Assembly: GCF_037042905.1 (NCBI RefSeq) | Contig: NC_087254.1 | Location: forward strand, 7,006,001-7,070,000 | Direction: 5' to 3' | Source of the DNA: Lytechinus pictus | Lineage: Eukaryota | Length of the DNA: 64,000 nucleotides | Part shown: positions 6,101 through 23,855 of the stretch, piece after piece | How positions within the stretch are numbered: the first letter of the stretch is position 1 | Layout of the letters: each line of letters opens with the position of its first letter | Notes under the pieces: model-generated | What the model was told of the DNA's origin: nothing | Database searches by the model: none | What the model saw: only the letters and a program-made list of their open reading frames with translations | Program-made: the position numbers and the translations under genes

Positions 6101-9100
6101 CTATATGATTCATATTTTTCCTTAATGCAAACATTTTCTCCACTTGTTCTGAAATTTTTCTTTAGATGGGAAGGGATATTTCTTTTTGTTGGACAAAGGC
6201 AATCCTAATTGTCAATGCGTAGTATCCTAATGGTATGATAGGTTGCGAGAATGCATATGACTAGTCTTTGATTGTACTGCATATTTACTGATTGGTGATA
6301 CTGTAAGTGGTCATGATGGCTCTGTCATGGATCTGCTCCACAGTACAACACTGCTCTCATTAACACCTACACACCATCTAGGTTTCTACGCTCCGGTCTT
6401 CTTACAGTTCCAAAATGTAAAACAAAGTGAGGGGGAGGGCATTCATCCATGCGGGTCCCTCGCTATGGCATTCCCTCCTACGAGAGATCAGGGAGAGCAA
6501 GTGTGTCGAAACACTTAAGATTAAGCTAAAAACTTACCTCTTAAAACTTATCTTATCAATGATTTTTTGCTATTTGTTATTTTATCATGACCGGTCATGG
6601 TTGTGAGATGATTGTTTATCAAATAACTAAGGATCCATATCACTGTCTTATAAAACAAATAATAGGAAGATTAAATGAGAACTTACCTGTTTGAAATTTA
6701 ATCTTTATTTTATAAGTAAGTCGTAGAGAAGAGACTACATGTCTCATCGGGAATAATATGAGATCCCGCTGATCACGTGCGTGTCAATCTTTAAAGCAGT
6801 ACAAGGCTACAGGTGAATTATAGGAAGATGAAGATGTTGAGAACTTGCCTAAATAAAACTATGTAAGTCGCAGGGTGGGAGAGGAGGGATGTAGTCTCTT
6901 CTCTACGACTTACTTATAAAATAAAGATTAAATTTCAAACAGGTAAGTTCTCATTTAATCTTCCTATTTTACTACGTAAGCCTCCGATTGAGACTACATG
7001 TCTCATCGGGAATAATATGAGATTTCAAAGCCCTGTAGACTTGTACGTAGTAATACCTCTGTAAGCCTATCAAGGCATCCAACAACAGAAAAACTCCCCA
7101 AAAGTATGGGCCTACATGTACCTGTACAAATGTAGTTCAAGACTAATTCACCTTGTGAAGTCAATGTTTCAAAACTGCCTGCGAAAATTGACCAGTATTC
7201 TGCAAAGGTTTGCAATAAAAAGTTTGGAATGTCTTCTCTGACACCCAACCTGCTCTAGACATAATCTCTGATACAGGTACCTCACTTCGTTGTGCTGCCG
7301 AAGTAGAAGCTGCTCTCGTAGAGTGAGCATGAAATAACTCTGTGTCGATACCTGCCTCATGCATGACAGTCTTGATCCAACGTGCTATTGTTTGCTTTGT
7401 AGCACGATGATGGGGCTTCTTACATGTTACTAACAAGTGTCTCTCCATGCCCCGCAGATTCTTTGTCCGTTGCACATATTCTTTCATATAGTTCATTATG
7501 CACAATCTCCTATCTGGAGGGTAAGCTTTAAGTGTTACATTGAGTCCTGTATTTCCAGGCTTATTTTGCTTCAGTGTATTTTCAAACGCAATCTCAACTG
7601 ACGATTTATTCCACCTCATCCTGTCCAGGTGAATGACATGTAGAGACTGCACTCTTTGTGCAGAAACAAGTGCTATCAACATAGTCAATTTCTGCGTTAG
7701 TTGCTTCAGATTAAGTGCCTTAGCTGGAGATAGCTTCCTGAGATAGTTCATTACCACTTTGACATCCCATATAGAAGAGTACCGGGGTGCAGGCGGACTC
7801 AGATGGAAAACTCCTTTCATAAATCTGTTAACAAGAGGATGCGACCCAAGAGGTTGGCATCCATCATCCACAATAAGAAATGTGGATAGGGCACTTCTAG
7901 CTGTATTTAAGCTGCTATAACCAACCTTCTCTTCGTCCAACATAAATGTGAGAAAGGCAAGAACATCACAAACTTTGACTTGTAAATAATTAATGTGTCT
8001 CTTGGCACAAAACTTTTTCCATTTCCTTATGTACACCTGGTACTGTGACTTGGTGGATCCTTTCCACGAAGCTGCTATAACATCTATTGTCCTTTGTGTG
8101 AGGCCTTGTTTGGCATAGAGTCCGCTCCAAGCCTGCAACATAAAAGTGATAAGTGATTATTCAAAGGATGTGGGGTACCTGTGACCAGCATGGGTTCCTC
8201 TACCAGCATACTGTTAAGAACAGGGAACCAAACTTGTGTTGGCCAGTTCGGTACAACCAATATCCCACATGCCTTATCCTTCTGAATCTTTTGCAAACAC
8301 AAAGGTATCATACTAAAAGGAGGGAAAGCATAAAATTCCCATTGGCCCCAATCAACAGTGAAGGCATCTACGGCCAAGGCCTCTGGATCAGGCCTCCAAG
8401 AAATGTACCTGTTAACCTGTTTATTCAGGCGGGAGGCAAACAAATCGATTTCTGGTATGCCAAATCTCTCTACTATTTTTTGGAATATCCTCTTATTCAA
8501 CATCCATTCTGTACTATCAGAGAATTTCCGTGACATACGATCTGCCTCAATATTCAATCTTCCAGGTAAATGAGCAGCTGTAAGCCAGATGTCATTATTG
8601 ATACACCATTTCCAAATATTAATGGCTGCTCTATTACATTCCGGCGACTTTGTGCCACCCATATTATTCAAGTATGCTACAGCTGTGGTATTGTCTGTCC
8701 TTACCAGTACATGAATGTTCTTTTTCTCTGAGCAAAAGGCTTTCAGCCCATGGCTAACAGCTATTGTTTCTAGCACATTAATTTTATTTTGATTGGCCAG
8801 TGCCATTTCTTCACTGTTCCATCTACCACCTGTTGAAAAGGAGAGATCTGTTGCCCCCCAACCTTTTCCACTAGCATCTGTATGAATTTCCACATCTGGT
8901 TTTGCCCTCTGCATGGGGTTGAATTGCGAATCAATGTTAAATATCCACCACTGCAATTCATAGATGCTTTCTCTTGATAGTGTCATTTGCCTATCAAAAT
9001 GTCCCTTGTTCTTTGCAAGGGCAAATATCTTGTCTTTCTCCAACGCTCTGTAAAAGAGAGGACCATATTGTACAGCTGGACAAGATGCTACTAATTGTCC

Positions 9101-12100
9101 AATTACCCTTGCAACTTTCCTAGTTTGCGGATTCTGATTACCCATCAATTCAAGATTGTTTAATGTTTTCTTGCTTCTCCCTTGGAAGCCTGACACTCAT
9201 GTCTCAGGTGTTCAGATTGAACCCCAGAAAGGTGATCTCACAAGTAGGATCTAAAACAGACTTTTCAGGGTGAATAATAAAACCCAACTCTGAAAGCAAT
9301 GTAGTAGTTGCTTTAACTGCTGCCTCTGATTTCTTAGCAGTTTTGGCTATAATAAGAGTGTCATCTAGATATCCAATTACAATATGGCCTTTCTCCCTGA
9401 GCGACGCAAAGACAGGTTTAAGCAGTTTTGTAAAAAGCCTTGGTGCTGAGCTAAGCCCATTGGGTAATGCTTGAAATTGCCATAATTTTCCCTGCCATAC
9501 AAATCTCAGATATTTTCTAGACTCAGGGTGAATAGGTACCGTGAAATATGCATCTCGAAGGTCGACTGAAGCTAAATAATCATCTTGAGAAATGAGGGGT
9601 AGAGCTGTTCTAATATTGTCCATCTTAAAATGGCAATATGAAATGCTTTTGTTCAATTCTGACAGATCTAATATGATCCGCAGGCCGCCATTTTTCTTTG
9701 GCCTTGTGAAAATATTCGATATAAATTCCCCTTTTATATGATCACATGATTCTATAACATTTTTCTCCAGCAGTTTATTTATCTCTTCTGTAATCACTGC
9801 TGTTTCCTCTGAATTTCTTTTAAACTCATGAAGGGGTTTTTCCCTTCTAGGGGGAAATTTTAGTGGATCAAATTCAAGCTTGTAACCCTGTACAGCTTGT
9901 AAAATAAATGAATCAGATGTAAGCTCTCCCCATTTATGAGCATAAAGCTTCAGTCGACCTCCGACTGGAAAATCATAATTCTGTGTAGATCTAGGTAGAT
10001 TGGAAGTCTTTCCTACCTTGTCAAAATCTGGTAGTTTCTCTACTTTCTGCCCTGCCCTTGGCTGGACTTTCTGAACTGTGGGGCTTGATGTCCCTCCCGA
10101 GCTGCTGTCGGTGTGAATGTGTGAGGGACCTGTGGAGCTCTTCTCCTCCACTGGGTTCGCTGGCCTAAAAAAGGTCTTGACGCACTGCCTGGTGAGTCAG
10201 AGTAGGATGTCCGCGACGTCCAACCAGCTTCTTTATATCTACGTTCATGCCCTTGGCTTGGATAAGGTCTATATGATGGTTTCGGTTTTTTATAACCACC
10301 TTTCATAACTCCAGCTGCCGCTTTATGCTGGTCTTGCAAGTCTTTCACCTGCTTGCCCAGATCATCTCCGAATAGGTACTTTGTTACTGGATTTGTGGGC
10401 TTGCAAAGATGAGTAAACTTTGTGTTAAGATCTGGCTTTATCAGTTCTTTGCGGAGGGCATTCATCTCAAAATTAGCATTGCATAACAATGCCAAAACGT
10501 CCTGTTGTTCAGAGGACATGTTATTTGGATCAAGAAGACTGACGTAAGCCGAGATGCCCCTCGTAAGAGATTTTTGGACCCTCTGAAGTTTGACATCCTT
10601 GGTACGGACAGAGGCAGACAAATTGTCCCAAATTGTCTGATTAACTTTCGGAGTGTCAATGACTCTGCAGTTTGACGGGCATGGATATTTGCTGCTGGTC
10701 TCATCCAGCACTTTTTCCTCCAAGTGATGGCTCATTAAGTAATTCACAGAGTTAGCCAATTCTTCCTCAAGAGGTTGCCCAATGTCTGATGCTACCGCAA
10801 ATTTAGCAGCAAAAGCTGGAACTTTTAGTGATTCAGTCATCTCCGTGCAAGACTCCAACTCTGCACTTGTGCTCTCATCTTCAACTTCCATAATTCCCTC
10901 TGTATGACTTGCGGTGGAGGCTGTTTCACTGCGACCAAGATCAAAATGTCGCTCTGGCTGTGCATGTCCCATGCCTGCCATATCATCTTGTTTATTGGGA
11001 AGAGCCTCCATAAATTGGCAAAGTAAGCCTTCGAGTCTGTCGAGACGATTGTTCACCATTCCAATTTCATCCTTCGACTTAGACGTTTTCGGCCGAGCCG
11101 TCGCGACCGCCGAGCGATCGCTAGACTTCTGCACCGCCGGAACTCCCCGGGTGCGCTCCGATCCTGTCGTCCCCTTGGCCGCCGCAGCACGGTCAGCCAG
11201 ACTCACGTTTTCCAACTCCATACTCGAAATTTCCGCCGCTACGCGGTCGGAATTCTTGTCCTTTTCCTTTTCCACGGCCACGCCTGCGGAACGTTTATCC
11301 TTTAAATCCTTCATAATAAGTTTGATTATTCCAAGTTTTAGAATTTCTGCGAAATTCTATGGATTTTTCTACGCTGTGAAAAATCTTTTCCGCTCAATCA
11401 CAACACGCGCCAACGAATTGACACGCACGTGATCAGCGGGATCTCATATTATTCCCGATGAGACATGTAGTCTCAATCGGAGGCTTACGTAGTAAAATAC
11501 ACATTATGTTGCGTGGGCTTTGGAATAATTACAAACCCTTTTTACCTTTGAAACAGTCCAAACAACCTAGGCAATGCCTTGGGCATGTTTGGAACTGTTC
11601 CACAGATTCCACCTCGAGCATGCAATTCTTACTTATACCCTAACTGATATTCATTATTTGCATAGTACCTGATATCTGGCAGTGTCTTATCACGTTTCCA
11701 GAGAAGTCTCTCGTGGTTGGTAAAGATTCTCTGAAGAGACTGGTGAATGGATTCGGCGTTCCTTTCTACTAGGTCTGGATGTAGGGCCTCCCTTTCTGTA
11801 GACTTCCCACTGGGGTCACCAATCAACGCTGTGGCTCCACCAATCTAATGTCAATAATTGCAATAACACATAAATCATTATCACACACATAGGCCTTGTA
11901 GCATGCATTGAAATGTTTGTTTTGGTCTTTATGATCTGCATGTGCAAATTCAGAATGTATTGCGCAACATGGATTAAATAGTTTATTTAAAATCGTGAAA
12001 CATTGAGGCAGAAACTTTTAACAATACAGATTTGTTGCATGAATTTTCCAGGGGTGTTAAATATTCCCTTTTTAAAAGGCGTTATTACATTTGTGGGTGA

Positions 12101-15100
12101 AATTATTACATTTGTGGGTAAAGTGATATTACATTTGTGGATGCAACATCCCCCCCCCCCCTCCAGTAGATGGGGTTAGTATACAATAATGTAATGCTTA
12201 CCAAAGCTACACACTGGTGTCCAGCTCTTTGGCAGTGAATGAGAGCTACAAGGGCAAGAAGATTACCAATGTGAAGACTATCGGCAGTAGGATCTACTCC
12301 ACAGTAGATGCACTGGGGGCTGGACATCAGAAGCTTCGGCAACTCATCACTGTATACACCAAATTCAAACAAACATTCATTTATTACTCAGGGACTTTAT
12401 GGCACTGATGCATCAACTGGTGGTTGTTTCATAAAGCTGTTTGTAAGTTGCAAATGACTTAACACATAACTGGGGCCCGTCTTACAAAGAGTTGTAATTG
12501 ATCCATTCAATCGCAACTATGGAAAGTCGGCAACGTCAACATCTAAAATACATGTTTGTTCAAAATATTTTCTAGAAATGATGTACATTCACACATTCGC
12601 TGTTTTCTTGACAATTCAGTTTGCTTCTCTTTGTTTTCAGAGGACATTGAGCAAACTTCCTGTCGAAAAAAATCATGACATTGATTGATTTCCATGTATC
12701 AATTGATTGGATTAATTGTAAGTCTTTGTAAGACGGGGCCCTGGTGATCTATTCTTGTGCTATGTATCTAAGTTGCTGATGCATACAGTTGTGCACAATT
12801 TTAAGGACAGCTTCATGAAACGCCTAAATTGCCACTTAGACACCCATCTTGTCTACTTTTTATGTAGTTCCATCTGACAAGGTCTAATCAGAGTATGTAC
12901 ACCATCAGTTTGTTGGTAAACTGCCAATTCGTCTATTGCCATCTCATCCATCTCTACCTTCCAATAGTCTAATGCCATTTTGTCTAATAGCCATTTGGTC
13001 CAATAACCATTTGGTCTAATAATCACTTTGCCTAATCACCAGTTCGTCCAAGACCATTTCGTCTCATAACCAGTTGGTCTAATACCTATTTTCATTTCAT
13101 TCATTTCGTCCAATTATACTAAATGGTATATGGAGTAAAAGGCTTTTGGACCGACTGATAAGTAGACGAAATGGTGAGTGGACGAAATGGCATTTAGACC
13201 AAGTAGAAAGTGGACGACTTGATGGTTACCCAAATGATAGACGAATTGGTAATGGTCGTATTGGCATTAGATCAATTGGAAATAAACCCATTTTGTCTAC
13301 TAACCCTTAAGTCAAACTGACATTCGACCCATCTATCATTTCATCCCATTTCCAGTTACTCTTTACCCACTTAATCAAATATCCACTTGGCCAAACACCA
13401 GTCGATATGATTAAATTAAATGTTTATGAACCAAATTTTCATTTGACATAGTGATTAATAATAGTAAACAAAGTGGAAACTAGACCATCTGGACATCACA
13501 CTAATGGGGCATTGCAAGAAACTTGTGATCAATTACAAGTCTATTTTCAGCCCCTAAATCAGTCACAAGTTTTGAAATTAATTGCAAATTTGTAACTGAT
13601 TTCTAATATGCTTCCTGAAACAAGCAGTGTAATCCGATTTGCTAGAGTTGAAATTCTATCAATTGTAAAATAGCAGTAGAATATTTGCAACTGATTGCAA
13701 ATGTTTTCTTGCAACACCCCTGAGTCTTTATAAATACCAAGTGATGGTTGGACAAAATTGATACATGTAGCAGAAGTGGACTAATGGTGTAAGATTGTAT
13801 GAGAATTAGACCACCTGCCAATAGACCAAATGAATACAGGTCCATACACGACTTAGCATTAATGTTAATGGTAACCTAACCATCCATGCTATAAACCTTT
13901 GATTTCCAGTGGCTGATGGGCAGGGACAGAGTTACTATGAAAATTATTATTAACACAGTAAATATTGTTTATGCAACAAGGCTCTGAAAGTTAAAAAAGC
14001 TAGACTTAAAACAGTTGACCAACTAAGAACAAAAATGTAATATATGCAACATTTACAGAAAAGGTGACAAAGGTATTCAAGAAATTTAATTTTTTCAACT
14101 TTTAAAACCCAAAATCAAGAATATAATACTGTCATACACGTAGTTCACTATCTTACAAAGAATCTTTCCATTCAATTTGAACCTGGCCTGGATGGAACTA
14201 AAATATTAACGAACCTCTTCATTCTGTTTTCTCATTCCTCCCTTTGCATTTAATTCTTTCTCACATCGTTCCGTGCCAGCCTTGCGAGTGACTTGCGGGT
14301 AACTATTTTTGCACCCGCAGGTCAGCCGCATTGACAGTATCTTGCGCGCAAGTCTGATTTGCACGCAGAAAAGTTTTGAACATACTCAAAACATTTTTGC
14401 GGGTGAGCTGCAGGCAATCACCCGCAAGGCTTGCGCGGAACAATGTGACAAGGCCTTTACAATCAAATCTCGTTGAAATGACATTACCTTTGAGGTGGGA
14501 ATACATCATTGAAGACCCCTCTTTGGTGGAGAGTCAATACATTACTGTGAGTGCAGTATGACCGTCTTCCATTCTGAATAACAAGCTGTAATTGGACGTG
14601 TCTCGTTAATAGTCTGTAATCAAACAAACAAGATATTAATATTGTCAGTGAAACAACAAAAGATTGCTTTCATATTCATCTGGCAATGAATTTAAATCTT
14701 CTGAGTTCTGAGTGTATGTTTATCTATTTTACATGTCCAATAAACACTTATTCTTCTCTTCTCAAGTACTTCCAAACAGTTCAAATGTGAATAACTAGAG
14801 GAATGTAAAACTAATCTTGAAGAATGCCACCTATCCTTTTTGACTTAAATCAAAAGCATCCTCCCCTAACCTCGTGCATTATACCAGACCAAATGTCCTG
14901 CACTGTAAAACATCAATATCAAGATTATGAGGTCAAACCTCAGCATTTTCCCCTCAGATTCTATGTGGGCCGGGAGCCCCCCCCTCAACGATTCGCACAA
15001 TATTTTCGCCGTGCGACATTTTTTGACGGCGCCGCTCACTGATTTTTTTACTTTAAAGTCTTGCGTATCTTTTGACAGCAAATTTGAGGCGCCTGGGTAC

Positions 15101-18100
15101 ATGTTTCCAAAATTACGCGACATTTTGTAAATGCATGTCAGACAGAAAATTGCTCAAGAATGTGAGTTCATGCACAAAGTCAATGCAAATTGTGTTTTCA
15201 ATCAAAAATCATAATTGTATGATTATTTTTAGTTTTGCTGGTCTAAATGGATTCATTTTATGCTATTTATGATCTCAAAAGAGTCCCCGACAAAGTTCAT
15301 CCAAAAAACAATGAAAAACAATAGGTAAAAAAACCCAAAGAAATACATAAGAATTTGCAAAAAACAATAGGCCTATATTAAGTGAAAATTTGTGTAAATT
15401 AGGGAGACCGCAAATTTTTCTATTTCATCAACCACTTCATTAAACTGTCTGATTTTTTCAGATCTTGATAAAAATAGTGCAAAATAGAAATCTACCAAAT
15501 TTCATAGTAATCCATGAATTGGTTTTTGAGTAATAATCAAATGAATTTCGAATGAAATTCCACCAAATGCTCCCAATAGGCTCTGTAGTATAATTTGTCA
15601 CAACACACACACAGCTGAAACACACGGCCACACACAGAGTGCAGATATTTTGTATGCAGTTTTGCATTGGGCTTTCTGGAGTAGTTGGGGTAAGGGTATT
15701 TTTAAAGCAATTCTGACACTTGATCCTTAGGGAAAGGTGAAAAATTTGTTTTTCCATTGGATTTGCCATTATCAATACTACAAAAACCCGCTAGTTTACA
15801 AAAATATGGTACTTTTAATCACAAGATACGAGACTTTGAACTTCCTTTTTTAATGCCACATCAAAATTATGGTAATAACCAAATGTAAACTGAGTAGGCT
15901 ATTTGGAGCATTTTATTCGCTTTAATTTGATACCAAAATCATTAAATTTGGATAACGGGATCATATGTCAGAAATGCGTTGAACGTTGATTTTTCCCTCA
16001 AAACCATGACCATTTTTGGCTGTGTGAATGCAGTGAAAAGGGTGAAATTATTTGCTCTGTGCGCAGTCTTGTCTTGTCTTTCCGCTAATGCCCACAATCA
16101 TTATATTGATTATTATGGCATATGAACGTCAAGATTGACTTGACCTGAATTTTTCCGGGACCGGCAGGTGCAATACACCGGGTGAACACCCTACTCTTTG
16201 ACGAATAGTGTATTGGTTTTAAGTTTAACGTGCATAGGTAATGACTCTCCTATACACAGGACCAACATTTGCATCCTTTCCCGATGGACAGAGTGTTTTC
16301 CAACTGCATTCACACCTGCACTGAATACAGTGGTGAGGCACGCTAACACACAACGCTATATAATAGCTGCATCAGATTTTTTGTTAAGGCCACCGCACAC
16401 CTTACGACTGTTCGCGATCCGATTTTGGAACAAATCGCATTTTGCTCAATTTCTGAAAATGTGAATGGAACATATCATTTTATTTGAGGTTGATATTAAT
16501 TGAAAGAATACTAGTATAACCATTTTGAAAGATTGCAAGCCTTTATTTTGGAGTAAAAGCCAAATTAGTTTCAAATCGTAGCCAATCGTACGACTGCTAT
16601 GACGTCATTACGACTAGATATTAAATTTGCTCTTATTCTAAGAAGGATGATAGCATAGTCACAGATTTGAACATAGGGTATTCGTACGATGATTTCGAAC
16701 ATTAAACATTAAGATATTTCAAGTCTCAATATTGGCATCAAATTCTACTACGTTTTATTCCAAAATTGAGTCGCAGATCAATCGTAAGGTGTGTGGTCGC
16801 CTTTAGACCGTTTCGGCATGAGCGGGACTCAAACCCCTCACGTTTTAGATCTACGATCTTATCCGAAACATGCGCTCTAACTGACTGAGCTACGCTGCCT
16901 ACAAATACAATCACCCTAGTATTAGTTTTAATTGTTTGTAAAGATTGTGATGTTGCATGAATTTTATATTTCCCCCCATAAAATCCCACCTTTGTCACTC
17001 GGAATATCAGGGCGAGTTCACGGGCTCAATGTTCGGGTAGGTGGAGCGTAGTGTAGGGGTAGTGAAGTGGAGCCTGCATGAACATCGCTTGAGACTGAGT
17101 ACCTCAAGTGAAGTTCGTGCAGGCCACCCAAGGGTACATTACCGCCGCCGTCCACAGGATAACCACTTGCACGGCACTTGCAATGCCTTTCGGGCTATAT
17201 ATTTTAAATTAGCAATATATATGGATTTAAGATCAGATAAGCTTTGGATATGAAACTTACAAAACGATATGAAGCCAATTTCAATTCCTCTCTGTCTTTC
17301 TGGTACTTTATATCAATGATTTTTCTTGATGTCGAAGCAGGCATGGCGCCGATTCGCTGGTTCTCTCTATACGCACAGAGAGGGCGCGCGATATTATTTA
17401 ATAAATTTGCTTGTTTACGTCGTTTACGTCAGATCAGCTGTACTGCTGGTTGCGTTCTAGGCGCTCCGCATTTTTTTCGCTGTTCAGCGTTATTTTATGA
17501 TGTAGCGCCATCAGCGATTATACGTGACATGCAACCTGTTGATTTTTGGTACAATTTCCTATTATGCGCCGGCGACTTGAATCTAGACTGTTCGATAGGA
17601 AAAATTCGCATTTTGATTGTTGTTTGCGTAATTTCCACCGCAGTATGAAGGATGACTAAGGACGGATCGAACGAAGTATCGTGGTTGAGATTTGGAGGTA
17701 AGCAATAAAAACACTTTTATAAATAATTTCCAATTCCTTTTTACAATGAACTTAAATGATACGATCAAGATTAACATAGTGGAAAAATATTGAAAGGTTT
17801 GGCGTGTTTTAGTCCCTCACATTCGTGTGATGAATGAAAACGTCAAAATGCACTATGAAATCACATGCGTTGTGCGAGGTTAGTATACTAACCTCGCATG
17901 TTGTGTGAGTGGTGCAGGCTCCAATCCCTTTCCCTTTTTCTTGAGCTTCCAACACACACCCTTCTATTCTGGTGTCCTCCTTCATTTACAATGAAAAACA
18001 ATAGGTAAAAAAACCCAAAGAAATACATAAGAATTTGCAAAAAACAATAGGCCTATATAAAGTGAAAATTTGTGTAAATTAGGGAGACCGCAAATTTTTC

Positions 18101-21100
18101 TATTTCATCAACCACTTCATTAAACTGTCTGATTTTTTCAGATCTTGATAAAAATAGTGCAAAATAGAAATCTACCAAATTTCATAGTAATCCATGAATT
18201 GGTTTTTGAGTAATAATCAAATGAATTTCGAATGAAATTCCACCAAATGCTCCCAATAGGCTCTGTAGTATAATTTGTCACAACACACACACAGCTGAAA
18301 CACACGGCCACACACAGAGTGCAGATATTTTGTATGCAGTTTTGCATTGGGCTTTCTGGAGTAGTTGGGGTAAGGGTATTTTTAAAGCAATTCTGACACT
18401 TGATCCTTAGGGAAAGGTGAAAAATTTGTTTTTCCATTGGATTTGCCATTATCAATACTACAAAAACCCGCTAGTTTACAAAAATATGGTACTTTTAATC
18501 ACAAGATACGAGACTTTGAACTTCCTTTTTTAATGCCACATCAAAATTATGGTAATAACCAAATGTAAACTGAGTAGGCTATTTGGAGCATTTTATTCGC
18601 TTTAATTTGATACCAAAATCATTAAATTTGGATAACGGGATCATATGTCAGAAATGCGTTGAACGTTGATTTTTCCCTCAAAACCATGACCATTTTTGGC
18701 TGTGTGAATGCAGTGAAAAGGGTGAAATTATTTGCTCTGTGCGCAGTCTTGTCTTGTCTTTCCGCTAATGCCCACAATCATTATATTGATTATTATGGCA
18801 TATGAACGTCAAGATTGACTTGACCTGAATTTTTCCGGGACCGGCAGGTGCAATACACCGGGTGAACACCCTACTCTTTGACGAATAGTGTATTGGTTTT
18901 AAGTTTAACGTGCATAGGTAATGACTCTCCTATACACAGGACCAACATTTGCATCCTTTCCCGATGGACAGAGTGTTTTCCAACTGCATTCACACCTGCA
19001 CTGAATACAGTGGTGAGGCACGCTAACACACAACGCTATATAATAGCTGCATCAGATTTTTTGTTAAGGCCACCGCACACCTTACGACTGTTCGCGATCC
19101 GATTTTGGAACAAATCGCATTTTGCTCAATTTCTGAAAATGTGAATGGAACATATCATTTTATTTGAGGTTGATATTAATTGAAAGAATACTAGTATAAC
19201 CATTTTGAAAGATTGCAAGCCTTTATTTTGGAGTAAAAGCCAAATTAGTTTCAAATCGTAGCCAATCGTACGACTGCTATGACGTCATTACGACTAGATA
19301 TTAAATTTGCTCTTATTCTAAGAACGATGATAGCATAGTCACAGATTTGAACATAGGGTATTCGTACGATGATTTCGAACATTAAACATTAAGATATTTC
19401 AAGTCTCAATATTGGCATCAAATTCTACTACGTTTTATTCCAAAATTGAGTCGCAGATCAATCGTAAGGTGTGTGGTCGCCTTTAGACCGTTTCGGCATG
19501 AGCGGGACTCAAACCCCTCACGTTTTAGATCTACGATCTTATCCGAAACATGCGCTCTAACTGACTGAGCTACGCTGCCTACAAATACAATCACCCTAGT
19601 ATTAGTTTTAATTGTTTGTAAAGATTGTGATGTTGCATGAATTTTATATTTCCCCCCATAAAATCCCACCTTTGTCACTCGGAATATCAGGGCGAGTTCA
19701 CGGGCTCAATGTTCGGGTAGGTGGAGCGTAGTGTAGGGGTAGTGAAGTGGAGCCTGCATGAACATCGCTTGAGACTGAGTACCTCAAGTGAAGTTCGTGC
19801 AGGCCACCCAAGGGTACATTACCGCCGCCGTCCACAGGATAACCACTTGCACGGCACTTGCAATGCCTTTCGGGCTATATATTTTAAATTAGCAATATAT
19901 ATGGATTTAAGATCAGATAAGCTTTGGATATGAAACTTACAAAACGATATGAAGCCAATTTCAATTCCTCTCTGTCTTTCTGGTACTTTATATCAATGAT
20001 TTTTCTTGATGTCGAAGCAGGCATGGCGCCGATTCGCTGGTTCTCTCTATACGCACAGAGAGGGCGCGCGATATTATTTAATAAATTTGCTTGTTTACGT
20101 CGTTTACGTCAGATCAGCTGTACTGCTGGTTGCGTTCTAGGCGCTCCGCATTTTTTTCGCTGTTCAGCGTTATTTTATGATGTAGCGCCATCAGCGATTA
20201 TACGTGACATGCAACCTGTTGATTTTTGGTACAATTTCCTATTATGCGCCGGCGACTTGAATCTAGACTGTTCGATAGGAAAAATTCGCATTTCGATTGT
20301 TGTTTGCGTAATTTCCACCGCAGTATGAAGGATGACTAAGGACGGATCGAACGAAGTATCGTGGTTGAGATTTGGAGGTAAGCAATAAAAACACTTTTAT
20401 AAATAATTTCCAATTCCTTTTTACAATGAACTTAAATGATACGATCAAGATTAACATAGTGGAAAAATATTGAAAGGTTTGGCGTGTTTTAGTCCCTCAC
20501 ATTCGTGTGATGAATGAAAACGTCAAAATGCACTATGAAATCACATGCGTTGTGCGAGGTTAGTATACTAACCTCGCATGTTGTGTGAGTGGTGCAGGCT
20601 CCACTCCACTTCACTACCGCTACACTACGCTCCACCCACCCAAGGGTTCATTAGTACATGCCACCACGCACAGAAGAATCAAGCCATAGTCATAGAAGTC
20701 GTGTGTTGTGGATCGTGGACACCAAAAGTGGGATCGCAGCACGCGCGACCCACTAGTTAGAAATCCACTGCCAAATGCGGTTCATGGTGCGAGGTTAGTA
20801 TACTAACCTCGCAATACGTGTGAGTGCGCTCCACCTGCCCGAACTTCGAGACCATGAACTCGTTCTGATATTCCGAGTGACAAAGGTGGGATTTTTTTTA
20901 TGGGGGGAAAATATAAAATTCATGCAACATCACGATCTTTAAAAAAAAAAAAAAAATTAAAACTAATATTCTTACTTTACATAAAGTTTCACCTCTTTTC
21001 ATAGACCAAAAGCTTTGGTCTCTGTTATGTTGGTTGTTCAGCTGAACTCCGTTGGCTTCACTCACCAAATACAGAGACCGAAGTTCTAGCGCGATCTGTA

Positions 21101-23855
21101 CAGGGGACTCAATGGCAATATGTTTATGTACTTAAGATCGGATAAAACGGGGAAGTGAATTTGCGCGACAGCCGAGGTAAGTCACTGTTTTTGTTCCTTT
21201 TAACTTGATTTTTCACCGTTTTTTGGCAATTAATGCCAAGAGGGAATATTAATTTGCATTTCGGTCGCATTAATTTTCAAAAGTTTGATTCATTAAAGAC
21301 AAAAATTGAAGAGCCCCGACGGGGGGATTTTGCATTGCAAGTCCCCTAATGGTGGCTGCACGCTAGCGAGCCGTCTGTGTACGAGGAGAAATAAAAAATA
21401 AAAAAAAGTTAAAAAAATCCTCGAAACAGACGGCTGCCAGCTGTCTACTCTTTTCAATGCTTCTATCAGTCTCAAAATTGGTGATTTAGAGCCAACATGA
21501 AGTTCCTCACATGTTCATATCTTCTCGCGTGCGAAGGAATATCAGTCATATGCACGCGACACACACAACAAGTCAAAAAGATAGTGGGCTTTTGCCCACA
21601 TAAAATATCACCAATAATCTGGTATTTCACATTCTGCTATGACACTTACCGAATCATTTAGATCCTTCCGTGACTTCTCCTTGAAGTTTTTTCTTAAAAA
21701 AATGGATATTTTCTTGATCTTTAGTGAAGATTTCACGGAGATAAAATTTGGTCAGCGTAGATATCAATTTTCGCCTAAAGAGGGCGCGCGATTTATATTC
21801 ATATCAAAGACACGACAAGGGAAAGATTAGGAACCTACACTATTTTACACGCAAATCGACGCAAGGCATTACGCGAAGTCCGTGAAGTGTCCAATCTTTT
21901 CATTGTATAGACTTTGGTATACCGTGACGTTCGTTAATACTGCTTGTACTGCTGGTTTCGTTCCAGGCATGTGTATTTAAAAAAAAAAAATTATATTAGT
22001 CATCGTTTTAAATTAATTGCAACAAAAGTGTTATCATCGCCAATAGTAATCCTGAATTATGTTTTTGAAGGTATTTTATTTATTGGTGCCCATAATTAGT
22101 AAATTAATCATAAGAATTGCGCATTCAAAGAATTTAGACACAGTTATAAAATTACCGAGGAGCTGAATCAAGGTTGTGAAATTTAATAGCGCCACCAACG
22201 GGCTTCCTTGTATTTCCATAGAAGAGACAAACGAAGTCACTTGCTAGGCCGAGGTAAGCGAAATTTGCTCTTTTTAAATGAAATGAGTTAAATATCATAT
22301 GTATAATTTTGTTATGTATTGCTACTTACCGGAAAGAGCCCCGGTGCGTAGCGAGAAGGAGTTTCGGCAAATATTACTTCAGCAATGAAGCAATGTTTGC
22401 CGACTACTTCGAAATCTACGGTCAAAAGCGGTCCGGTGTACGAGGTTCGTATATAATATATATACGAACCTCATATTAGTGTGAGTCACTTGTTCACTGC
22501 AACCACCCTGCCTGTGGGGAATCTACAGGTTGGACTATGGCATGCCAATGCTGTACAGAGCACACACTTTAAAAAATGATTAAAATATCACTTTTGTGAC
22601 CAATATTACTAATTTCAATACAGTTGCAATTTATTTTTCATTAGAAACTTGGGAATAATTTTTGTATTCACTAGAGCGCTCAAAAACGTTAATTTTGGGC
22701 ATATTTTTGTGTACGCCCTCTATTGGTGGAAAATAATATGGCAAGAAAATTTTCATTTTTTTATCTCTATTTTTAATTAAGAAAAAAATAATTTAAAGAA
22801 TCAAATTTACTTAAGGACCAAGTTGTATGACAAATGGGTGTATTTTAAACTGTCAGTGTAAAAAAAATTTGTCCCAAAGAAAAAGAGAAAATAAGCCAAA
22901 CATTGCCATCCTTATTTTGCCACACATGGAGATACAACTGAGAACAAGGTTATATCTAGACAGCTGGCAGCCGTCTGTTTCGAGGAGTTTTTTAACATTT
23001 TTTTAAATTTTTTATTCTCCTCGTACACAGACGGCTCGCTAGCGTGCAGCCACCATTAGGGGACTTGCAATGCGAAATCCCCCCGTCGGGGCTCTTCAAT
23101 TTTTGTCTTTAATGAATAAAAATTTTGAAAATTAACGCGACCAAAATGCAAATTAATATTCCCTCTTGGCATTAATTGCCCAAAAATGGAGAAAAATCAA
23201 GTTAAAAGGAACAAAAACAGTGACTTACCTCGGCTGTCGCGCAAATTCACTTCCCCGTTTTATCCGATCTTAAGTACATAAACATATATATGGCCATTGA
23301 GTCCCCTGTACAGATCGCGCTAGAACTTCGGTCTCTGTATTTGGTGAGTGAAGCCAACGGAGTTCAGCTGAACAACCAACATAACACATTAACAGAGACC
23401 GAAGCTTTTGGTCTAGGTTATAATAATATCATAACCTTGTTCATTGAATGAGTGACAGTGGTGTGAGTGGCGAATGCCGAGACCCTTGCCAAGCCTTGCG
23501 CATGCGATGTTTTGAAATCGGCAGCGAATTATTTATACGTTTGAGGAACTTCATGTTGGCTCTAAATCACCAATTTGAGACTGATACTAAGCATGGAAAA
23601 TAAGTGTAACTTAGTTAGAGTGGCTCGAGCTAGAGCCTGAGGCAATACGCATTCACGTTACACAGAAAAGCACGTGTGGGACTACACTTTGCAGACTGCG
23701 CCAGTATACTGTTTAGTAAATGTTTTCTTCGAACATGAACATATTCAAACACTATTACAGTTTAATTTCAGATTCTTAAATAAAGGACAAATTATTCGAT
23801 CACAAGATCATCATATTTACCTCTTAATGGTCAATGGAACTCTCGTAAAAGACAT
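38..23855 (-). CDS. YARS2: Mitochondrial tyrosyl-tRNA synthetase; 9 coding exons in window (330 aa), 3' end lies beyond the left edge
   Basis: Exons 23821-23855, 14488-14613, 12202-12349, 11669-11844, 5635-5736, 4418-4532, 3976-4054, 1611-1720, 38-136; all GT-AG with consistent phases. Spliced protein [32 protein letters not shown]...RGVFNDVFP...[15 protein letters not shown] (HIGH motif)...[13 protein letters not shown]...[12 protein letters not shown]...[10 protein letters not shown]...[11 protein letters not shown] (KMSKS-like). Arg-rich N-terminus without acidic residues fits a mitochondrial presequence. Confidence 0.95.
1611..1720 (-). CDS. YARS2: YARS2 exon 8 (KMSKS-like motif)
   Basis: [36 protein letters not shown]; ag/gtaaag. 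Confidence 0.95.
2081..2577. mobile_element. Non-autonomous DNA transposon (Kolobok-like MITE)
   Basis: TTAA on both sides; long TIR AGGGGAAGTTCACCCTGAC...GTCAGGGTGAACCTCCCCT; purine-purine termini. Confidence 0.85.
2790..3295 (-). mobile_element. Non-autonomous hairpin-bearing element (possibly Crypton-type)
   Basis: Long imperfect hairpin centred on gatgctctattcaac-gaggcgttagccga-gttgaatagagcatc; architecture similar to 37750-38130. Family assignment is from memory. Confidence 0.45.
3976..4054 (-). CDS. YARS2: YARS2 exon 7
   Basis: [26 protein letters not shown]; ag/gtgagt. Confidence 0.95.
4418..4532 (-). CDS. YARS2: YARS2 exon 6
   Basis: [38 protein letters not shown]; ag/gtaagt. Confidence 0.95.
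5148..5476. mobile_element. MITE with CAGGGTTCCCACAG TIRs
   Basis: Perfect 14-bp TIR, internal repeated agtcatggaa motifs, GTATAC on both flanks. Confidence 0.8.
5635..5736 (-). CDS. YARS2: YARS2 exon 5
   Basis: [33 protein letters not shown]; ag/gtaagc. Confidence 0.93.
6889..7023. repeat. DIRS internal complementary region (ICR)
   Basis: 6889-6968 is the exact reverse complement of 6661-6740; 6966-7023 is the exact reverse complement of 11441-11498. Confidence 0.95.
7161..8141 (-). CDS. DIRS tyrosine recombinase, 326 aa, intact
   Basis: Catalytic residues R (SAQRVQSL), K (LKQNK), HxxR (HSTR), W (AGW), Y (TFQTFY); N-terminal core-binding region (STKSQY...LNTARSALS). Confidence 0.95.
   Translation of the reverse strand: MLQAWSGLYAKQGLTQRTIDVIAASWKGSTKSQYQVYIRKWKKFCAKRHINYLQVKVCDVLAFLTFMLDEEKVGYSSLNTARSALSTFLIVDDGCQPLGSHPLVNRFMKGVFHLSPPAPRYSSIWDVKVVMNYLRKLSPAKALNLKQLTQKLTMLIALVSAQRVQSLHVIHLDRMRWNKSSVEIAFENTLKQNKPGNTGLNVTLKAYPPDRRLCIMNYMKEYVQRTKNLRGMERHLLVTCKKPHHRATKQTIARWIKTVMHEAGIDTELFHAHSTRAASTSAAQRSEVPVSEIMSRAGWVSEKTFQTFYCKPLQNTGQFSQAVLKH
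8084..9196 (-). pseudogene. DIRS RNase H plus N6-adenine methyltransferase-like domain (pol C-half, frameshifted from RT)
   Basis: [32 protein letters not shown] (RNase H); IDLFAS and YAFPPF (MT). Frameshift near 9150. Confidence 0.9.
9204..10151 (-). pseudogene. DIRS reverse transcriptase (pol N-half), ended by a premature TGA
   Basis: VGGRL...[49 protein letters not shown]. In-frame TGA at 9204-9206, after which the frame continues [16 protein letters not shown]. Confidence 0.93.
10040..11314 (-). CDS. DIRS ORF1 (gag-like), 424 aa
   Basis: Intact ORF overlapping pol; YPCPSNC...PKVNQTIW...[11 protein letters not shown]...YLFGDDL is typical of invertebrate DIRS ORF1. Confidence 0.85.
   Translation of the reverse strand: MKDLKDKRSAGVAVEKEKDKNSDRVAAEISSMELENVSLADRAAAAKGTTGSERTRGVPAVQKSSDRSAVATARPKTSKSKDEIGMVNNRLDRLEGLLCQFMEALPNKQDDMAGMGHAQPERHFDLGRSETASTASHTEGIMEVEDESTSAELESCTEMTESLKVPAFAAKFAVASDIGQPLEEELANSVNYLMSHHLEEKVLDETSSKYPCPSNCRVIDTPKVNQTIWDNLSASVRTKDVKLQRVQKSLTRGISAYVSLLDPNNMSSEQQDVLALLCNANFEMNALRKELIKPDLNTKFTHLCKPTNPVTKYLFGDDLGKQVKDLQDQHKAAAGVMKGGYKKPKPSYRPYPSQGHERRYKEAGWTSRTSYSDSPGSASRPFLGQRTQWRRRAPQVPHTFTPTAAREGHQAPQFRKSSQGQGRK
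11669..11844 (-). CDS. YARS2: YARS2 exon 4
   Basis: [21 protein letters not shown]; ag/gt boundaries. Confidence 0.93.
12202..12349 (-). CDS. YARS2: YARS2 exon 3 (HIGH motif)
   Basis: [31 protein letters not shown]; ag/gtaag boundaries. Confidence 0.95.
12473..12740. mobile_element. MITE family A (GGGCCCGTCTTACAAAGA TIR; PIF/Harbinger-like)
   Basis: TIRs, CTG flanks; homologous copies at 54615-54895 and 56374-56638. Confidence 0.8.
14488..14613 (-). CDS. YARS2: YARS2 exon 2 ([41 protein letters not shown])
   Basis: ttacag acceptor, gtaatg donor; RGVFNDVFP resembles the TyrRS N-terminal RG-F motif. Confidence 0.85.
16066..16899 (-). mobile_element. tRNA-derived SINE interrupted by a MITE (second copy 18746-19579)
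   Basis: tRNA-like head 16814-16899 with A-box TAGCTCAGTCAG and B-box-like GTTTGAGTC; body with gcacgttaaa...cactattcgtcaaagagtaggg core; (AAGAC)n tail at 16066-16080. Confidence 0.7.
16388..16801. mobile_element. Harbinger-like MITE nested in the SINE (second copy 19068-19481)
   Basis: TIR GGCCACCGCACACCTTACGA...TCGTAAGGTGTGTGGTCGCC. Confidence 0.75.
21002..21447 (+). mobile_element. Non-autonomous DNA transposon with TAGAC...GTCTA ends and a 9-bp TSD (possibly AcademH-like)
   Basis: Perfect TSD CTCTTTTCA at 20993-21001 and 21448-21456; inverted copy at 22957-23415; terminal fragment near 50448-50505. Confidence 0.8.
22957..23415 (-). mobile_element. Second, inverted copy of the 9-bp-TSD element
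   Basis: Highly similar reverse complement of 21002-21447; imperfect TSD GGTTATATC/GGTTATAAT. Confidence 0.8.
23821..23855 (-). CDS. YARS2: YARS2 coding exon 1 ([12 protein letters not shown])
   Basis: ATG at 23855-23853, donor AG|gtaaat; phase 2 matches the acceptor at 14613; presequence-like composition. Short exon, so less certain. Confidence 0.7.

What the first reader, a model, noticed from the sequence alone, without database searches (positions are those of the whole stretch)
14867..23460. Chain of non-coding modules joined at palindromic GAGGTT-(AT)-AACCTC junctions fills YARS2 intron 1
Seen in sequence: the perfect 26-bp palindrome TGCGAGGTTAGTATACTAACCTCGCA occurs at 17873, 20553 (the duplicate) and, in different flanks, at 20788. 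Diverged versions lie at 22442-22472 (GAGGTTCGTATA-taatata-TATACGAACCTC) and 22942-23442 (GAACAAGGTTAT-aataatatc-ATAACCTTGTTC once a later insertion is removed). Both arms change together from site to site. The sites are directional: each is followed by AACCTY-N6/7-G(TG/AA)TGAGT, and two are preceded by AAAN-GCGGTYC...CGAGGTT. A head-to-head junction sits at 17072-17124 and a lone half-site (TAACCTCGT...ACCAGACC) at 14867. The modules (about 0.23-2.2 kb) differ but share blocks. Inference: this is a cassette-like array built by repeated integration at its own junction. Candidate mechanisms are a self-targeting family of non-autonomous DNA transposons (ends reminiscent of AcademH-type) or a tyrosine-recombinase att-site system. 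No cognate enzyme is encoded in the array.
Basis: partly seen in the sequence, partly recalled or inferred. Interest (0 to 1): 0.72.

Follow-up and report, generated by a model that had tools for sequence, protein, structure and literature searches.

The report
Nested hairpin-ended DNA transposons, sea urchin intron
The palindromes are not joints between cassettes: each is a stem-loop 12-14 bases inside the 3' end of a common non-coding cut-and-paste transposon, and the "chain" is a pile-up of such transposons in a gene intron, an ordinary kind of thing whose one notable trait is that these elements tend to land in and beside each other.

Summary

**What the palindrome is.** The 26-bp palindrome occurs three times in the window and 179 times in the genome. 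In every copy examined, homology runs through it and stops 13 nt later at GTGTGAGTG. It is therefore a fixed sub-terminal 3' stem-loop, not a junction.

**What the elements are.**
- Ends: 5'-CACYYAWGG ... stem-loop ... (G/A)TGAGTG-3'.
- 29 of 31 insertions scored have perfect 9-bp target-site duplications (TSDs).
- No ORFs.
- At least 2,900 genomic 3' ends, in three hairpin types whose arms differ by compensatory changes.

These are non-autonomous cut-and-paste DNA transposons. They are not Helitrons and not tyrosine-recombinase cassettes.

**What the array is.** The window array holds four independent insertions of four subfamilies and two copies of a TAGAC-ended element with 9-bp TSDs. They sit in older inverted-repeat elements, and a 2.68-kb local tandem duplication was added later. 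RNA reads are consistent with a location in intron 1 of the YARS2-like gene.

Members cluster 20-30 fold over chance, while an unrelated miniature transposon (MITE) does not. Several members sit in relatives' hairpin loops, termini or used target sites. Strict tail-to-head chains are rare (7 genome-wide).

**What is open.** The superfamily is unresolved. AcademH is favoured and MuDR is possible. No autonomous partner could be linked.

The parts
17125..17911 (+). E1: 787-bp non-autonomous element, 5' CACCCAAGGG..., hairpin type A at 17873-17898, 3' ...GTGTGAGTG. Flanked by the 8-bp TSD GTGCAGGC (17117-17124 and 17912-17919).
   Evidence: Homology to genomic copies starts at 17124/5 and ends at 17911. 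Five full-length relatives have 8-9-bp TSDs.
19805..20591 (+). E1': a copy of E1 made by the local tandem duplication, not by transposition.
   Evidence: 15308-17935 matches 17988-20615 at 99.7% identity, period 2680, with about 52-62 nt of unique filler between the copies.
15308..20615 (.). Two copies of a 2.63-kb segment (15308-17935 and 17988-20615): a recent segmental tandem duplication that carries E1 and the left arm of the older inverted repeat.
   Evidence: The left breakpoint cuts a repeat that is intact in the first copy. The right breakpoint cuts the inverted-repeat arm that is intact after the second copy.
20637..20826 (+). E2: 190-bp element, hairpin type A at 20788-20813, perfect 9-bp TSD CGCTCCACC (20628-20636 and 20827-20835).
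   Evidence: TSD-anchored search. Relatives in L004, L007, L011 and L013.
16920..17078 (-). Left arm of an older inverted-repeat (foldback-like) element C. Its right arm is 20592-20636 plus 20836-20968. E1 and E2 both sit in the right arm.
   Evidence: Inverted repeats I3-I14; 84-95% complementary arms.
21002..21447 (+). E5': 446-bp TAGAC...GTCTA element with palindromic ends and a perfect 9-bp TSD CTCTTTTCA (20993-21001 and 21448-21456).
   Evidence: The end motif has 1,833 genomic hits.
21513..22486 (+). E3: about 975-bp element, hairpin type B at 22442-22472. It is 5'-truncated by about 9 nt and has no TSD here. Its last base is replaced by the E4 insertion.
   Evidence: Genomic copies are 93-98% identical and match from 21513 to 22486, with at least 1,597 first-look candidates. 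Intact copies start CACCCATGGG and have 9-bp TSDs.
22487..23454 (+). E4: about 510-bp element (5' CACTTGTTCACTG..., hairpin type C, 3' ...GAATGAGTG) inserted in the last 8-9 nt of E3. GTGTGAGT recurs at 23461-23468, after a 6-nt filler. Its own hairpin is split by E5.
   Evidence: The homology boundary at 22487 and the 3' end are shared by 7 copies whose flanks differ. The L004 copy has its own TSD.
22957..23415 (-). E5: inverted copy of the TAGAC element, inserted in the loop of the E4 hairpin (TSD GGTTATATC; the right copy carries a 6-nt indel).
   Evidence: 94% identical to 21002-21447 in reverse. The consensus E4-type loop comes from other copies.
21448..21512 (+). Left arm of a small inverted-repeat element X. 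The right arm is 23540-23603. E3 and E4 lie between the arms.
   Evidence: 93% complementary over 60 nt. The same X element is hit at the same 9-bp site by an E3-type copy in L036.
14488..14615 (-). Coding exon of the YARS2-like gene, with no start codon. It is spliced to exon 12202-12349, which carries the HIGH motif. A further 5' exon lies beyond 17900.
   Evidence: Splice joint 12349->14488 in RNA reads and contigs; translation; Pfam tRNA-synt_1b match.

Best explanation
The region is a nest of non-autonomous cut-and-paste DNA transposons. Each palindrome is the sub-terminal 3' stem-loop of one element, 12-14 nt inside its end. The family has asymmetric ends (5'-CACYYAWGG...; ...stem-loop-(G/A)TGAGTG-3'; only about 6 bp of true terminal inverted repeat). 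It makes 9-bp target-site duplications, prefers a roughly symmetric target (C-W-N|G-N7-C|A-T-G), has no ORF, and has at least 2,900 copies. Shown: four subfamilies (E1-E4) and two copies of a TAGAC-ended 9-bp-TSD element inserted one after another into older inverted-repeat elements inside an intron of the YARS2-like gene, and a 2.68-kb tandem duplication then copied one of them. Inferred: the pile-up is not passive. Incoming elements are drawn to resident relatives, most simply because the transposase that binds the conserved AGGTT/AACCT palindrome on resident copies also captures nearby DNA as target, and because a site that was once a good target stays one. Inferred, weaker: the mobilising enzyme belongs to the AcademH lineage (9-10-bp TSDs), which has an intact helicase-bearing copy in this genome. 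MuDR is the alternative.
For: Ends and TSDs: in 28 of 28 copies, homology stops at ...GTGTGAGTG, 13 nt after the palindrome. 31 insertions have 9-bp TSDs, 29 of them perfect. Copy number: 1,807 type A/B 3' ends against 2 for the control, and 1,072 type C ends. E3-type copies are 93-98% identical. No coding capacity. Hairpins are stable and their arms covary. Target consensus from 30 empty sites. Clustering on contig C1: 9 neighbour pairs within 2.2 kb against 0.48 expected. Type C ends lie near A/B ends in 7 of 49 cases against 0.23 expected, and TAGAC-type ends in 8 of 78 against 0.36. An unrelated MITE gives 1 of 37 against 0.17, not significant. Direct nesting: insertions in relatives' hairpin loops (L047, L038, L024, window E5 in E4), in their termini (L002, window E4 in E3), 8 nt from an end (L028), and stacked on a used TSD (L038, L016). 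AcademH makes 9-10-bp TSDs (PMC10045372, citing Kojima 2020).
Against: No autonomous copy was linked to the family. The 97 exact matches to the 5' end of the longest subfamily include none near the helicase element, and those that could be paired with a 3' end on C1-C3 give elements of 5.1 kb or less. MULE loci carry no family motifs within 1.5 kb. Clustering statistics use a uniform null on one contig and near-exact motifs only. E3 in the window lacks a TSD and E4 has an irregular one, so part of the local history involves deletion or repair. Tandem stacking at exactly 9 nt is rare (7 against 2). Empty sites as a whole show no excess dyad symmetry, so a general cruciform-targeting model is not supported.
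Confidence: 0.8

Rival explanations
1. Passive graveyard: the elements are transposons as described, but the cluster only reflects tolerance of insertions in a large intron or TE-rich region, without any attraction between family members.
For: The intron also holds unrelated repeats: a MITE at 16361-16808, a tRNA-like repeat, and a DIRS-like element in the next intron. One control-MITE copy also lies near a family end. Empty sites show no general dyad symmetry.
Against: The unrelated MITE of similar abundance does not co-localise (1 of 37, not significant), whereas relatives do (7 of 49 and 8 of 78). Hairpin loops make up about 0.01% of the genome, yet four were hit in my sample. Two independent elements used the identical 9-bp site in X (window and L036), and stacked TSDs occur.
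Confidence: 0.2
2. The family belongs to the MuDR/Foldback superfamily rather than AcademH and is mobilised by a MULE transposase.
For: A 9-bp TSD is the MuDR norm. 17 MULE-domain matches, three in open frames over 700 aa, exist in the genome. Earlier follow-up notes filed other 9-bp-TSD foldback elements of this genome under Mutator.
Against: There are no long terminal inverted repeats. No family motif lies within 1.5 kb of any MULE match, and there is no DNA similarity. The TAGAC-ended relative is reported (unchecked) to carry a helicase.
Confidence: 0.3
3. Helitron/Helentron-type rolling-circle elements: the palindrome is the 3' terminator hairpin, and arrays arise by terminator read-through or tandem insertion.
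For: There is a sub-terminal 3' hairpin 12-14 nt from the end, the ends are asymmetric, and the elements are non-coding, abundant and clustered.
Against: 29 perfect 9-bp TSDs at varied target sequences. The termini are CAC...GTG, not TC...CTRR. There is no A/T or T/T target.
Confidence: 0.02
4. Cassette array built by a tyrosine recombinase acting on the palindromes as att/attC-like sites.
For: Palindromes recur between different modules. A tyrosine-recombinase ORF exists 7 kb away, at 7161-8141.
Against: Homology always continues 12-14 nt past the palindrome to a fixed terminus. The elements have TSDs. That recombinase is part of a DIRS-like retroelement with RT. Copies are dispersed singly over all chromosomes.
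Confidence: 0.02

Closest known systems
AcademH lineage of Academ DNA transposons (Kojima 2020, as cited in PMC10045372)
   Same: 9-10-bp TSDs. Found in animals.
   Different: No transposase or helicase lies inside or was linked to these copies. The published termini could not be compared because the paper is not held. Membership rests on TSD length alone.
MuDR/Mutator, including Foldback elements
   Same: 9-bp TSD, abundant non-autonomous derivatives, and palindromic or foldback end structures.
   Different: Only about 6 bp of terminal inverted repeat and asymmetric ends. No link to the 17 MULE-domain loci.
Helitron/Helentron 3' hairpins
   Same: A stem-loop about 10-14 nt before the 3' terminus whose stem sequence varies between families while pairing is kept. 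The elements are directional.
   Different: The elements here make 9-bp TSDs and so use staggered-cut integration, not rolling-circle insertion.
Nested MITEs in plants (Jiang and Wessler 2001, Plant Cell; recalled from memory)
   Same: Miniature non-autonomous elements insert into other copies of their own kind more often than chance allows.
   Different: Here the hits concentrate on the relatives' stem-loop, termini and used TSDs, and extend across subfamilies that share only their ends.

Membership tests
Helitron/Helentron | No target-site duplication; insertion between A and T (or T and T) | tested here: not met
   29 perfect and 2 one-mismatch 9-bp TSDs with varied sequences.
Helitron/Helentron | Sub-terminal 3' hairpin about 10-12 nt from the end | tested here: met
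   The hairpin ends 12-14 nt before the terminus in all three types.
Helitron/Helentron | 5'-TC ... CTRR-3' termini | tested here: not met
   The termini are 5'-CAC ... GTG-3'.
AcademH | 9- or 10-bp TSDs | tested here: met
   9 bp in 29 of 31 cases, and 8 bp in two or three more. Criterion from PMC10045372.
AcademH | Autonomous copies with the same termini encode an Academ DDE transposase and a helicase | not testable with these tools
Only the position of a helicase ORF could be confirmed. No 5' end of the long subfamily lies there.
MuDR/MULE | 8-10-bp (mostly 9-bp) TSDs | tested here: met
MuDR/MULE | Long terminal inverted repeats (typical, not universal) | tested here: not met
   The two ends share only CACYCA / TGAGTG.
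MuDR/MULE | Mobilising MULE transposase that shares the termini | tested here: inconclusive
   17 PF10551 matches were found. No family motif or DNA similarity lies in the 3.2-kb loci around them, but the element ends may lie further out.
Tyrosine-recombinase cassette/att system (integron-like, Crypton, DIRS) | Exchange within the palindromic core, no TSD, recombinase associated | tested here: not met
   Break points lie 12-14 nt beyond the palindrome, and TSDs are present. The only tyrosine recombinase nearby belongs to a DIRS-like retroelement.
MITE (descriptive class) | Short, non-coding, high copy number, TSD-flanked, dependent on a transposase supplied in trans | tested here: met
   Elements are 190-5,100 bp with no ORFs, at least 2,900 ends exist, and TSDs are present. 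The terminal inverted repeat is unusually short.

The most novel reading that the evidence does not exclude
The family uses its two ends differently. A structure-specific 3' stem-loop, whose pairing is kept by compensatory change over three subfamilies, would be read on unwound DNA by a helicase-assisted (AcademH-type) transposition complex. The same recognition would draw incoming copies into resident stem-loops. That would be a DDE cut-and-paste system with Helitron/IS200-like hairpin recognition and built-in homing, which has not been described.
Probability: 0.12. Interest if true: 0.65.

Novelty: new member of a known kind. Interest (0 to 1): 0.3.

Why it matters
It turns an apparently exotic cassette array into an ordinary transposon nest.

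Two points could repay work by transposon specialists. First, there is a covarying 3' stem-loop in an element that makes 9-bp TSDs. Second, there is a measurable tendency to insert into relatives' stem-loops, ends and used target sites. If the partner is AcademH, a superfamily that has never been studied experimentally, these short elements would be convenient substrates for a first transposition assay.

Tried and rejected
- **Helitron/Helentron.** This was my first guess. I dropped it once TSDs were found.
- **Autonomous partner.**
  - ORF scans of 1.8-4.2-kb copies gave only low-complexity frames.
  - Pfam MULE matches gave no link.
  - RecQ_Zn_bind matched only two places, neither linked to the family.
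  - Helicase_C places one open frame at the reported AcademH site, but nothing ties it to the family.
  - An exact 5'-end search of the long subfamily found no hit near the helicase element, and no paired element longer than 5.1 kb.
- **General cruciform or dyad-symmetric targeting.** Not supported: 7.5 against 7.1 complementary pairs of 16, P = 0.3.
- **Strict tail-to-head chaining through a shared 9-nt site.** Rare: 7 against 2.
- **tRNA genes.** None.
- **Formal pair counting on a MAFFT alignment of the three hairpin types.** Abandoned because type C aligned out of register. I read the compensatory changes by hand.
- **Spliced use of the exon-like GAG|GTAAG block of E1.** No joint in RNA reads.
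- **The Kojima 2020 AcademH paper.** Not held.

Full report
**Observation**

The 26-bp perfect palindrome is at 17873, 20553 and 20788, with none expected by chance. The diverged palindromes at 22442-22472 and at 22942-22953/23431-23442 are as described. The genome is an 812-Mb animal assembly; earlier notes of this scan call it the sea urchin Lytechinus pictus, which I did not check. It holds 179 exact copies of the 24-bp core spread over all large contigs, against 0 for the control.

**What the palindrome marks**

I oriented 28 copies by the downstream motif. In every one the conserved sequence runs through the palindrome and a further 13 nt, and ends exactly at ...GTGTGAGTG. After that the flanks are unrelated. 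The palindrome is therefore an internal, sub-terminal feature of a dispersed element, not a joint between modules.

**5' ends and target-site duplications**

The 5' ends were found where homology stops on the other side. They read CACC(T/C)A(T/A)GGGTACATT... in a 787-bp form (window 17125-17911) and CACTCATGGGATCAATGC... in forms of 1.8-4.2 kb. The bases before the 5' end repeat the bases after the 3' end.

A search anchored on that rule found 31 insertions with 9-bp target-site duplications, 29 of them perfect. Far less than one would be expected by chance. This excludes Helitron-type and tyrosine-recombinase mechanisms. It identifies cut-and-paste elements that integrate at staggered cuts 9 nt apart.

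The two ends share only about six bases (CACYCA / TGAGTG). No copy has an ORF other than low-complexity frames.

**Family size and the stem-loop**

- The 3' motif AACCTC-N6/7-GTGTGAGTG occurs 1,807 times, against 2 for the control.
- The type C end (...AACCTTGTTCATTGAATGAGTG) occurs 1,072 times.
- E3-type copies are 93-98% identical, so the group is young.

Three stem types exist: A, B and C. A and B differ at two stem positions, and both arms changed at each (G-C to A-T and A-T to C-G). C differs at further positions, again on both arms. The AGGTT/AACCT core is constant. Each type folds as a strong DNA hairpin (z -5.5 to -8.3).

**Anatomy of the window**

- An older inverted-repeat element C has arms at 16920-17078 and 20592-20968 around a 38-nt spacer.
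  - E1 (17125-17911, TSD GTGCAGGC) inserted into its right arm.
  - E2 (20637-20826, TSD CGCTCCACC) also inserted into its right arm.
- A 2.63-kb segment including E1 was later duplicated in tandem (15308-17935 and 17988-20615, 99.7% identical). This explains the palindrome at 20553.
- Further right, a small inverted-repeat element X (arms 21448-21512 and 23540-23603) carries several insertions.
  - E5' (21002-21447) is a TAGAC...GTCTA element with a perfect 9-bp TSD.
  - E3 (21513-22486) is 5'-truncated and has no TSD here.
  - E4 (22487-23454) is inserted into the last bases of E3.
  - A second, inverted TAGAC element (22957-23415) sits inside the loop of E4's hairpin.
- All five family copies lie on the + strand, antisense to the gene.
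- The 'half-site' at 14867 belongs to another repeat.

**Gene context**

A tRNA-synt_1b match lies at 12199-12312 on the minus strand. RNA reads and contigs join 12349 to 14488 with GT..AG on the minus strand. The joined exons read as a mitochondrial-type TyrRS N-terminal region with the HIGH motif.

Exon 14488-14615 has no start codon. One RNA contig carries 89 more 5' bases that do not lie within 12000-17900. The first exon is therefore further upstream, and the finding region is consistent with intron 1. I did not locate exon 1.

**Is the pile-up more than chance?**

On contig C1 (44.3 Mb):

| Comparison | Distance | Observed | Expected |
|---|---|---|---|
| Neighbour pairs among 100 type A/B ends | within 2.2 kb | 9 | 0.48 |
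| Neighbour pairs among 100 type A/B ends | within 500 bp | 6 | 0.11 |
| Type C ends near an A/B end | within 1.1 kb | 7 of 49 | 0.23 |
| TAGAC-type ends near an A/B end | within 1.1 kb | 8 of 78 | 0.36 |
| Unrelated MITE ends (1,493 copies genome-wide) near an A/B end | within 1.1 kb | 1 of 37 | 0.17 (not significant) |

At base level, insertions sit:

- in the hairpin loops of relatives (L047, L038, L024, and E5 in E4);
- in relatives' termini (L002, and E4 in E3);
- 8 nt from an end (L028);
- exactly on an already used TSD (L038, L016, and two TAGAC ends 9 nt apart on C1).

An E3-type copy and a TAGAC copy used the same 9-bp site in two different copies of X.

The 30 empty sites give a roughly symmetric target preference, C-W-N|G-N7-C|A-T-G. 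As a set they show no excess dyad symmetry, so only family hairpins, not palindromes in general, are favoured. Strict tail-to-head joining through one shared 9-nt site is rare (7 against 2).

**Mechanism**

*Shown:* staggered 9-nt integration, fixed asymmetric ends, a conserved and covarying 3' stem-loop, and non-random association with relatives.

*Inferred:* the palindrome is a recognition site for the mobilising enzyme. Resident copies that bind that enzyme bias target capture to themselves, and good target sites are re-used.

**Superfamily**

Among eukaryotic superfamilies, 9-bp TSDs point to MuDR or to AcademH, which makes 9-10 bp (PMC10045372, citing Kojima 2020). MULE-domain loci exist but could not be tied to the family.

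Earlier notes of this scan, which are unchecked leads, describe an intact 17-kb AcademH about 25.19 Mb beyond this window. I confirmed only that a Helicase_C match in a 452-aa open frame lies there. I favour AcademH (about 0.45) over MuDR (about 0.3), and neither is demonstrated.

**Verdict**

This is an ordinary transposon nest plus a local duplication, built from a well-defined but previously uncharacterised family of a known kind. The family's two mildly interesting traits are its 3' stem-loop and its tendency to insert into relatives.

Noticed in passing
window 7161-11314 (minus strand): Adjacent ORFs match a tyrosine recombinase (Phage_integrase), weakly a Dam/PCIF1-like methyltransferase, and a reverse transcriptase. 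Together they look like a DIRS-like retroelement in the next intron of the YARS2-like gene. It is unrelated to the palindrome family.
   Followed up: partly
window 16361-16808: A 448-bp MITE (terminal repeat AAGGCCACCGCACACC..., 1,493 genomic hits) sits inside a tRNA-like/SINE-like repeat. RNA reads from other, empty copies of that repeat skip it (joint 16360->16809). The repeat at 16334-16727 has by far the highest read depth in the stretch.
   Followed up: partly
window 17690-17702, 21170-21182, 22246-22258: E1, E5' and E3 each carry an exon-like block ending in GAG|GTAAG, 200-300 nt before their 3' end. This may be the relic first exon of the lost internal gene. No spliced reads were seen for E1.
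   Followed up: partly
G000:C1:35208611-35208669: Two TAGAC-type element ends face each other exactly 9 nt apart, as expected if a second element integrated on the TSD of the first.
   Followed up: no
L007 (G000:C1:33731137-33731188): One palindrome is flanked on both sides by the terminal motif (CACTCACAC...palindrome...GTGTGAGTG). This is either a 52-bp mini-element or two 3' ends sharing one stem-loop.
   Followed up: no
L026 (G000:C1:655800-665799): Two long family copies lie head to head, about 155 bp apart, each with its own 9-bp TSD. Together they mimic a 5.9-kb foldback element. A Tc1-like transposase ORF of 408 aa lies in the flank.
   Followed up: partly
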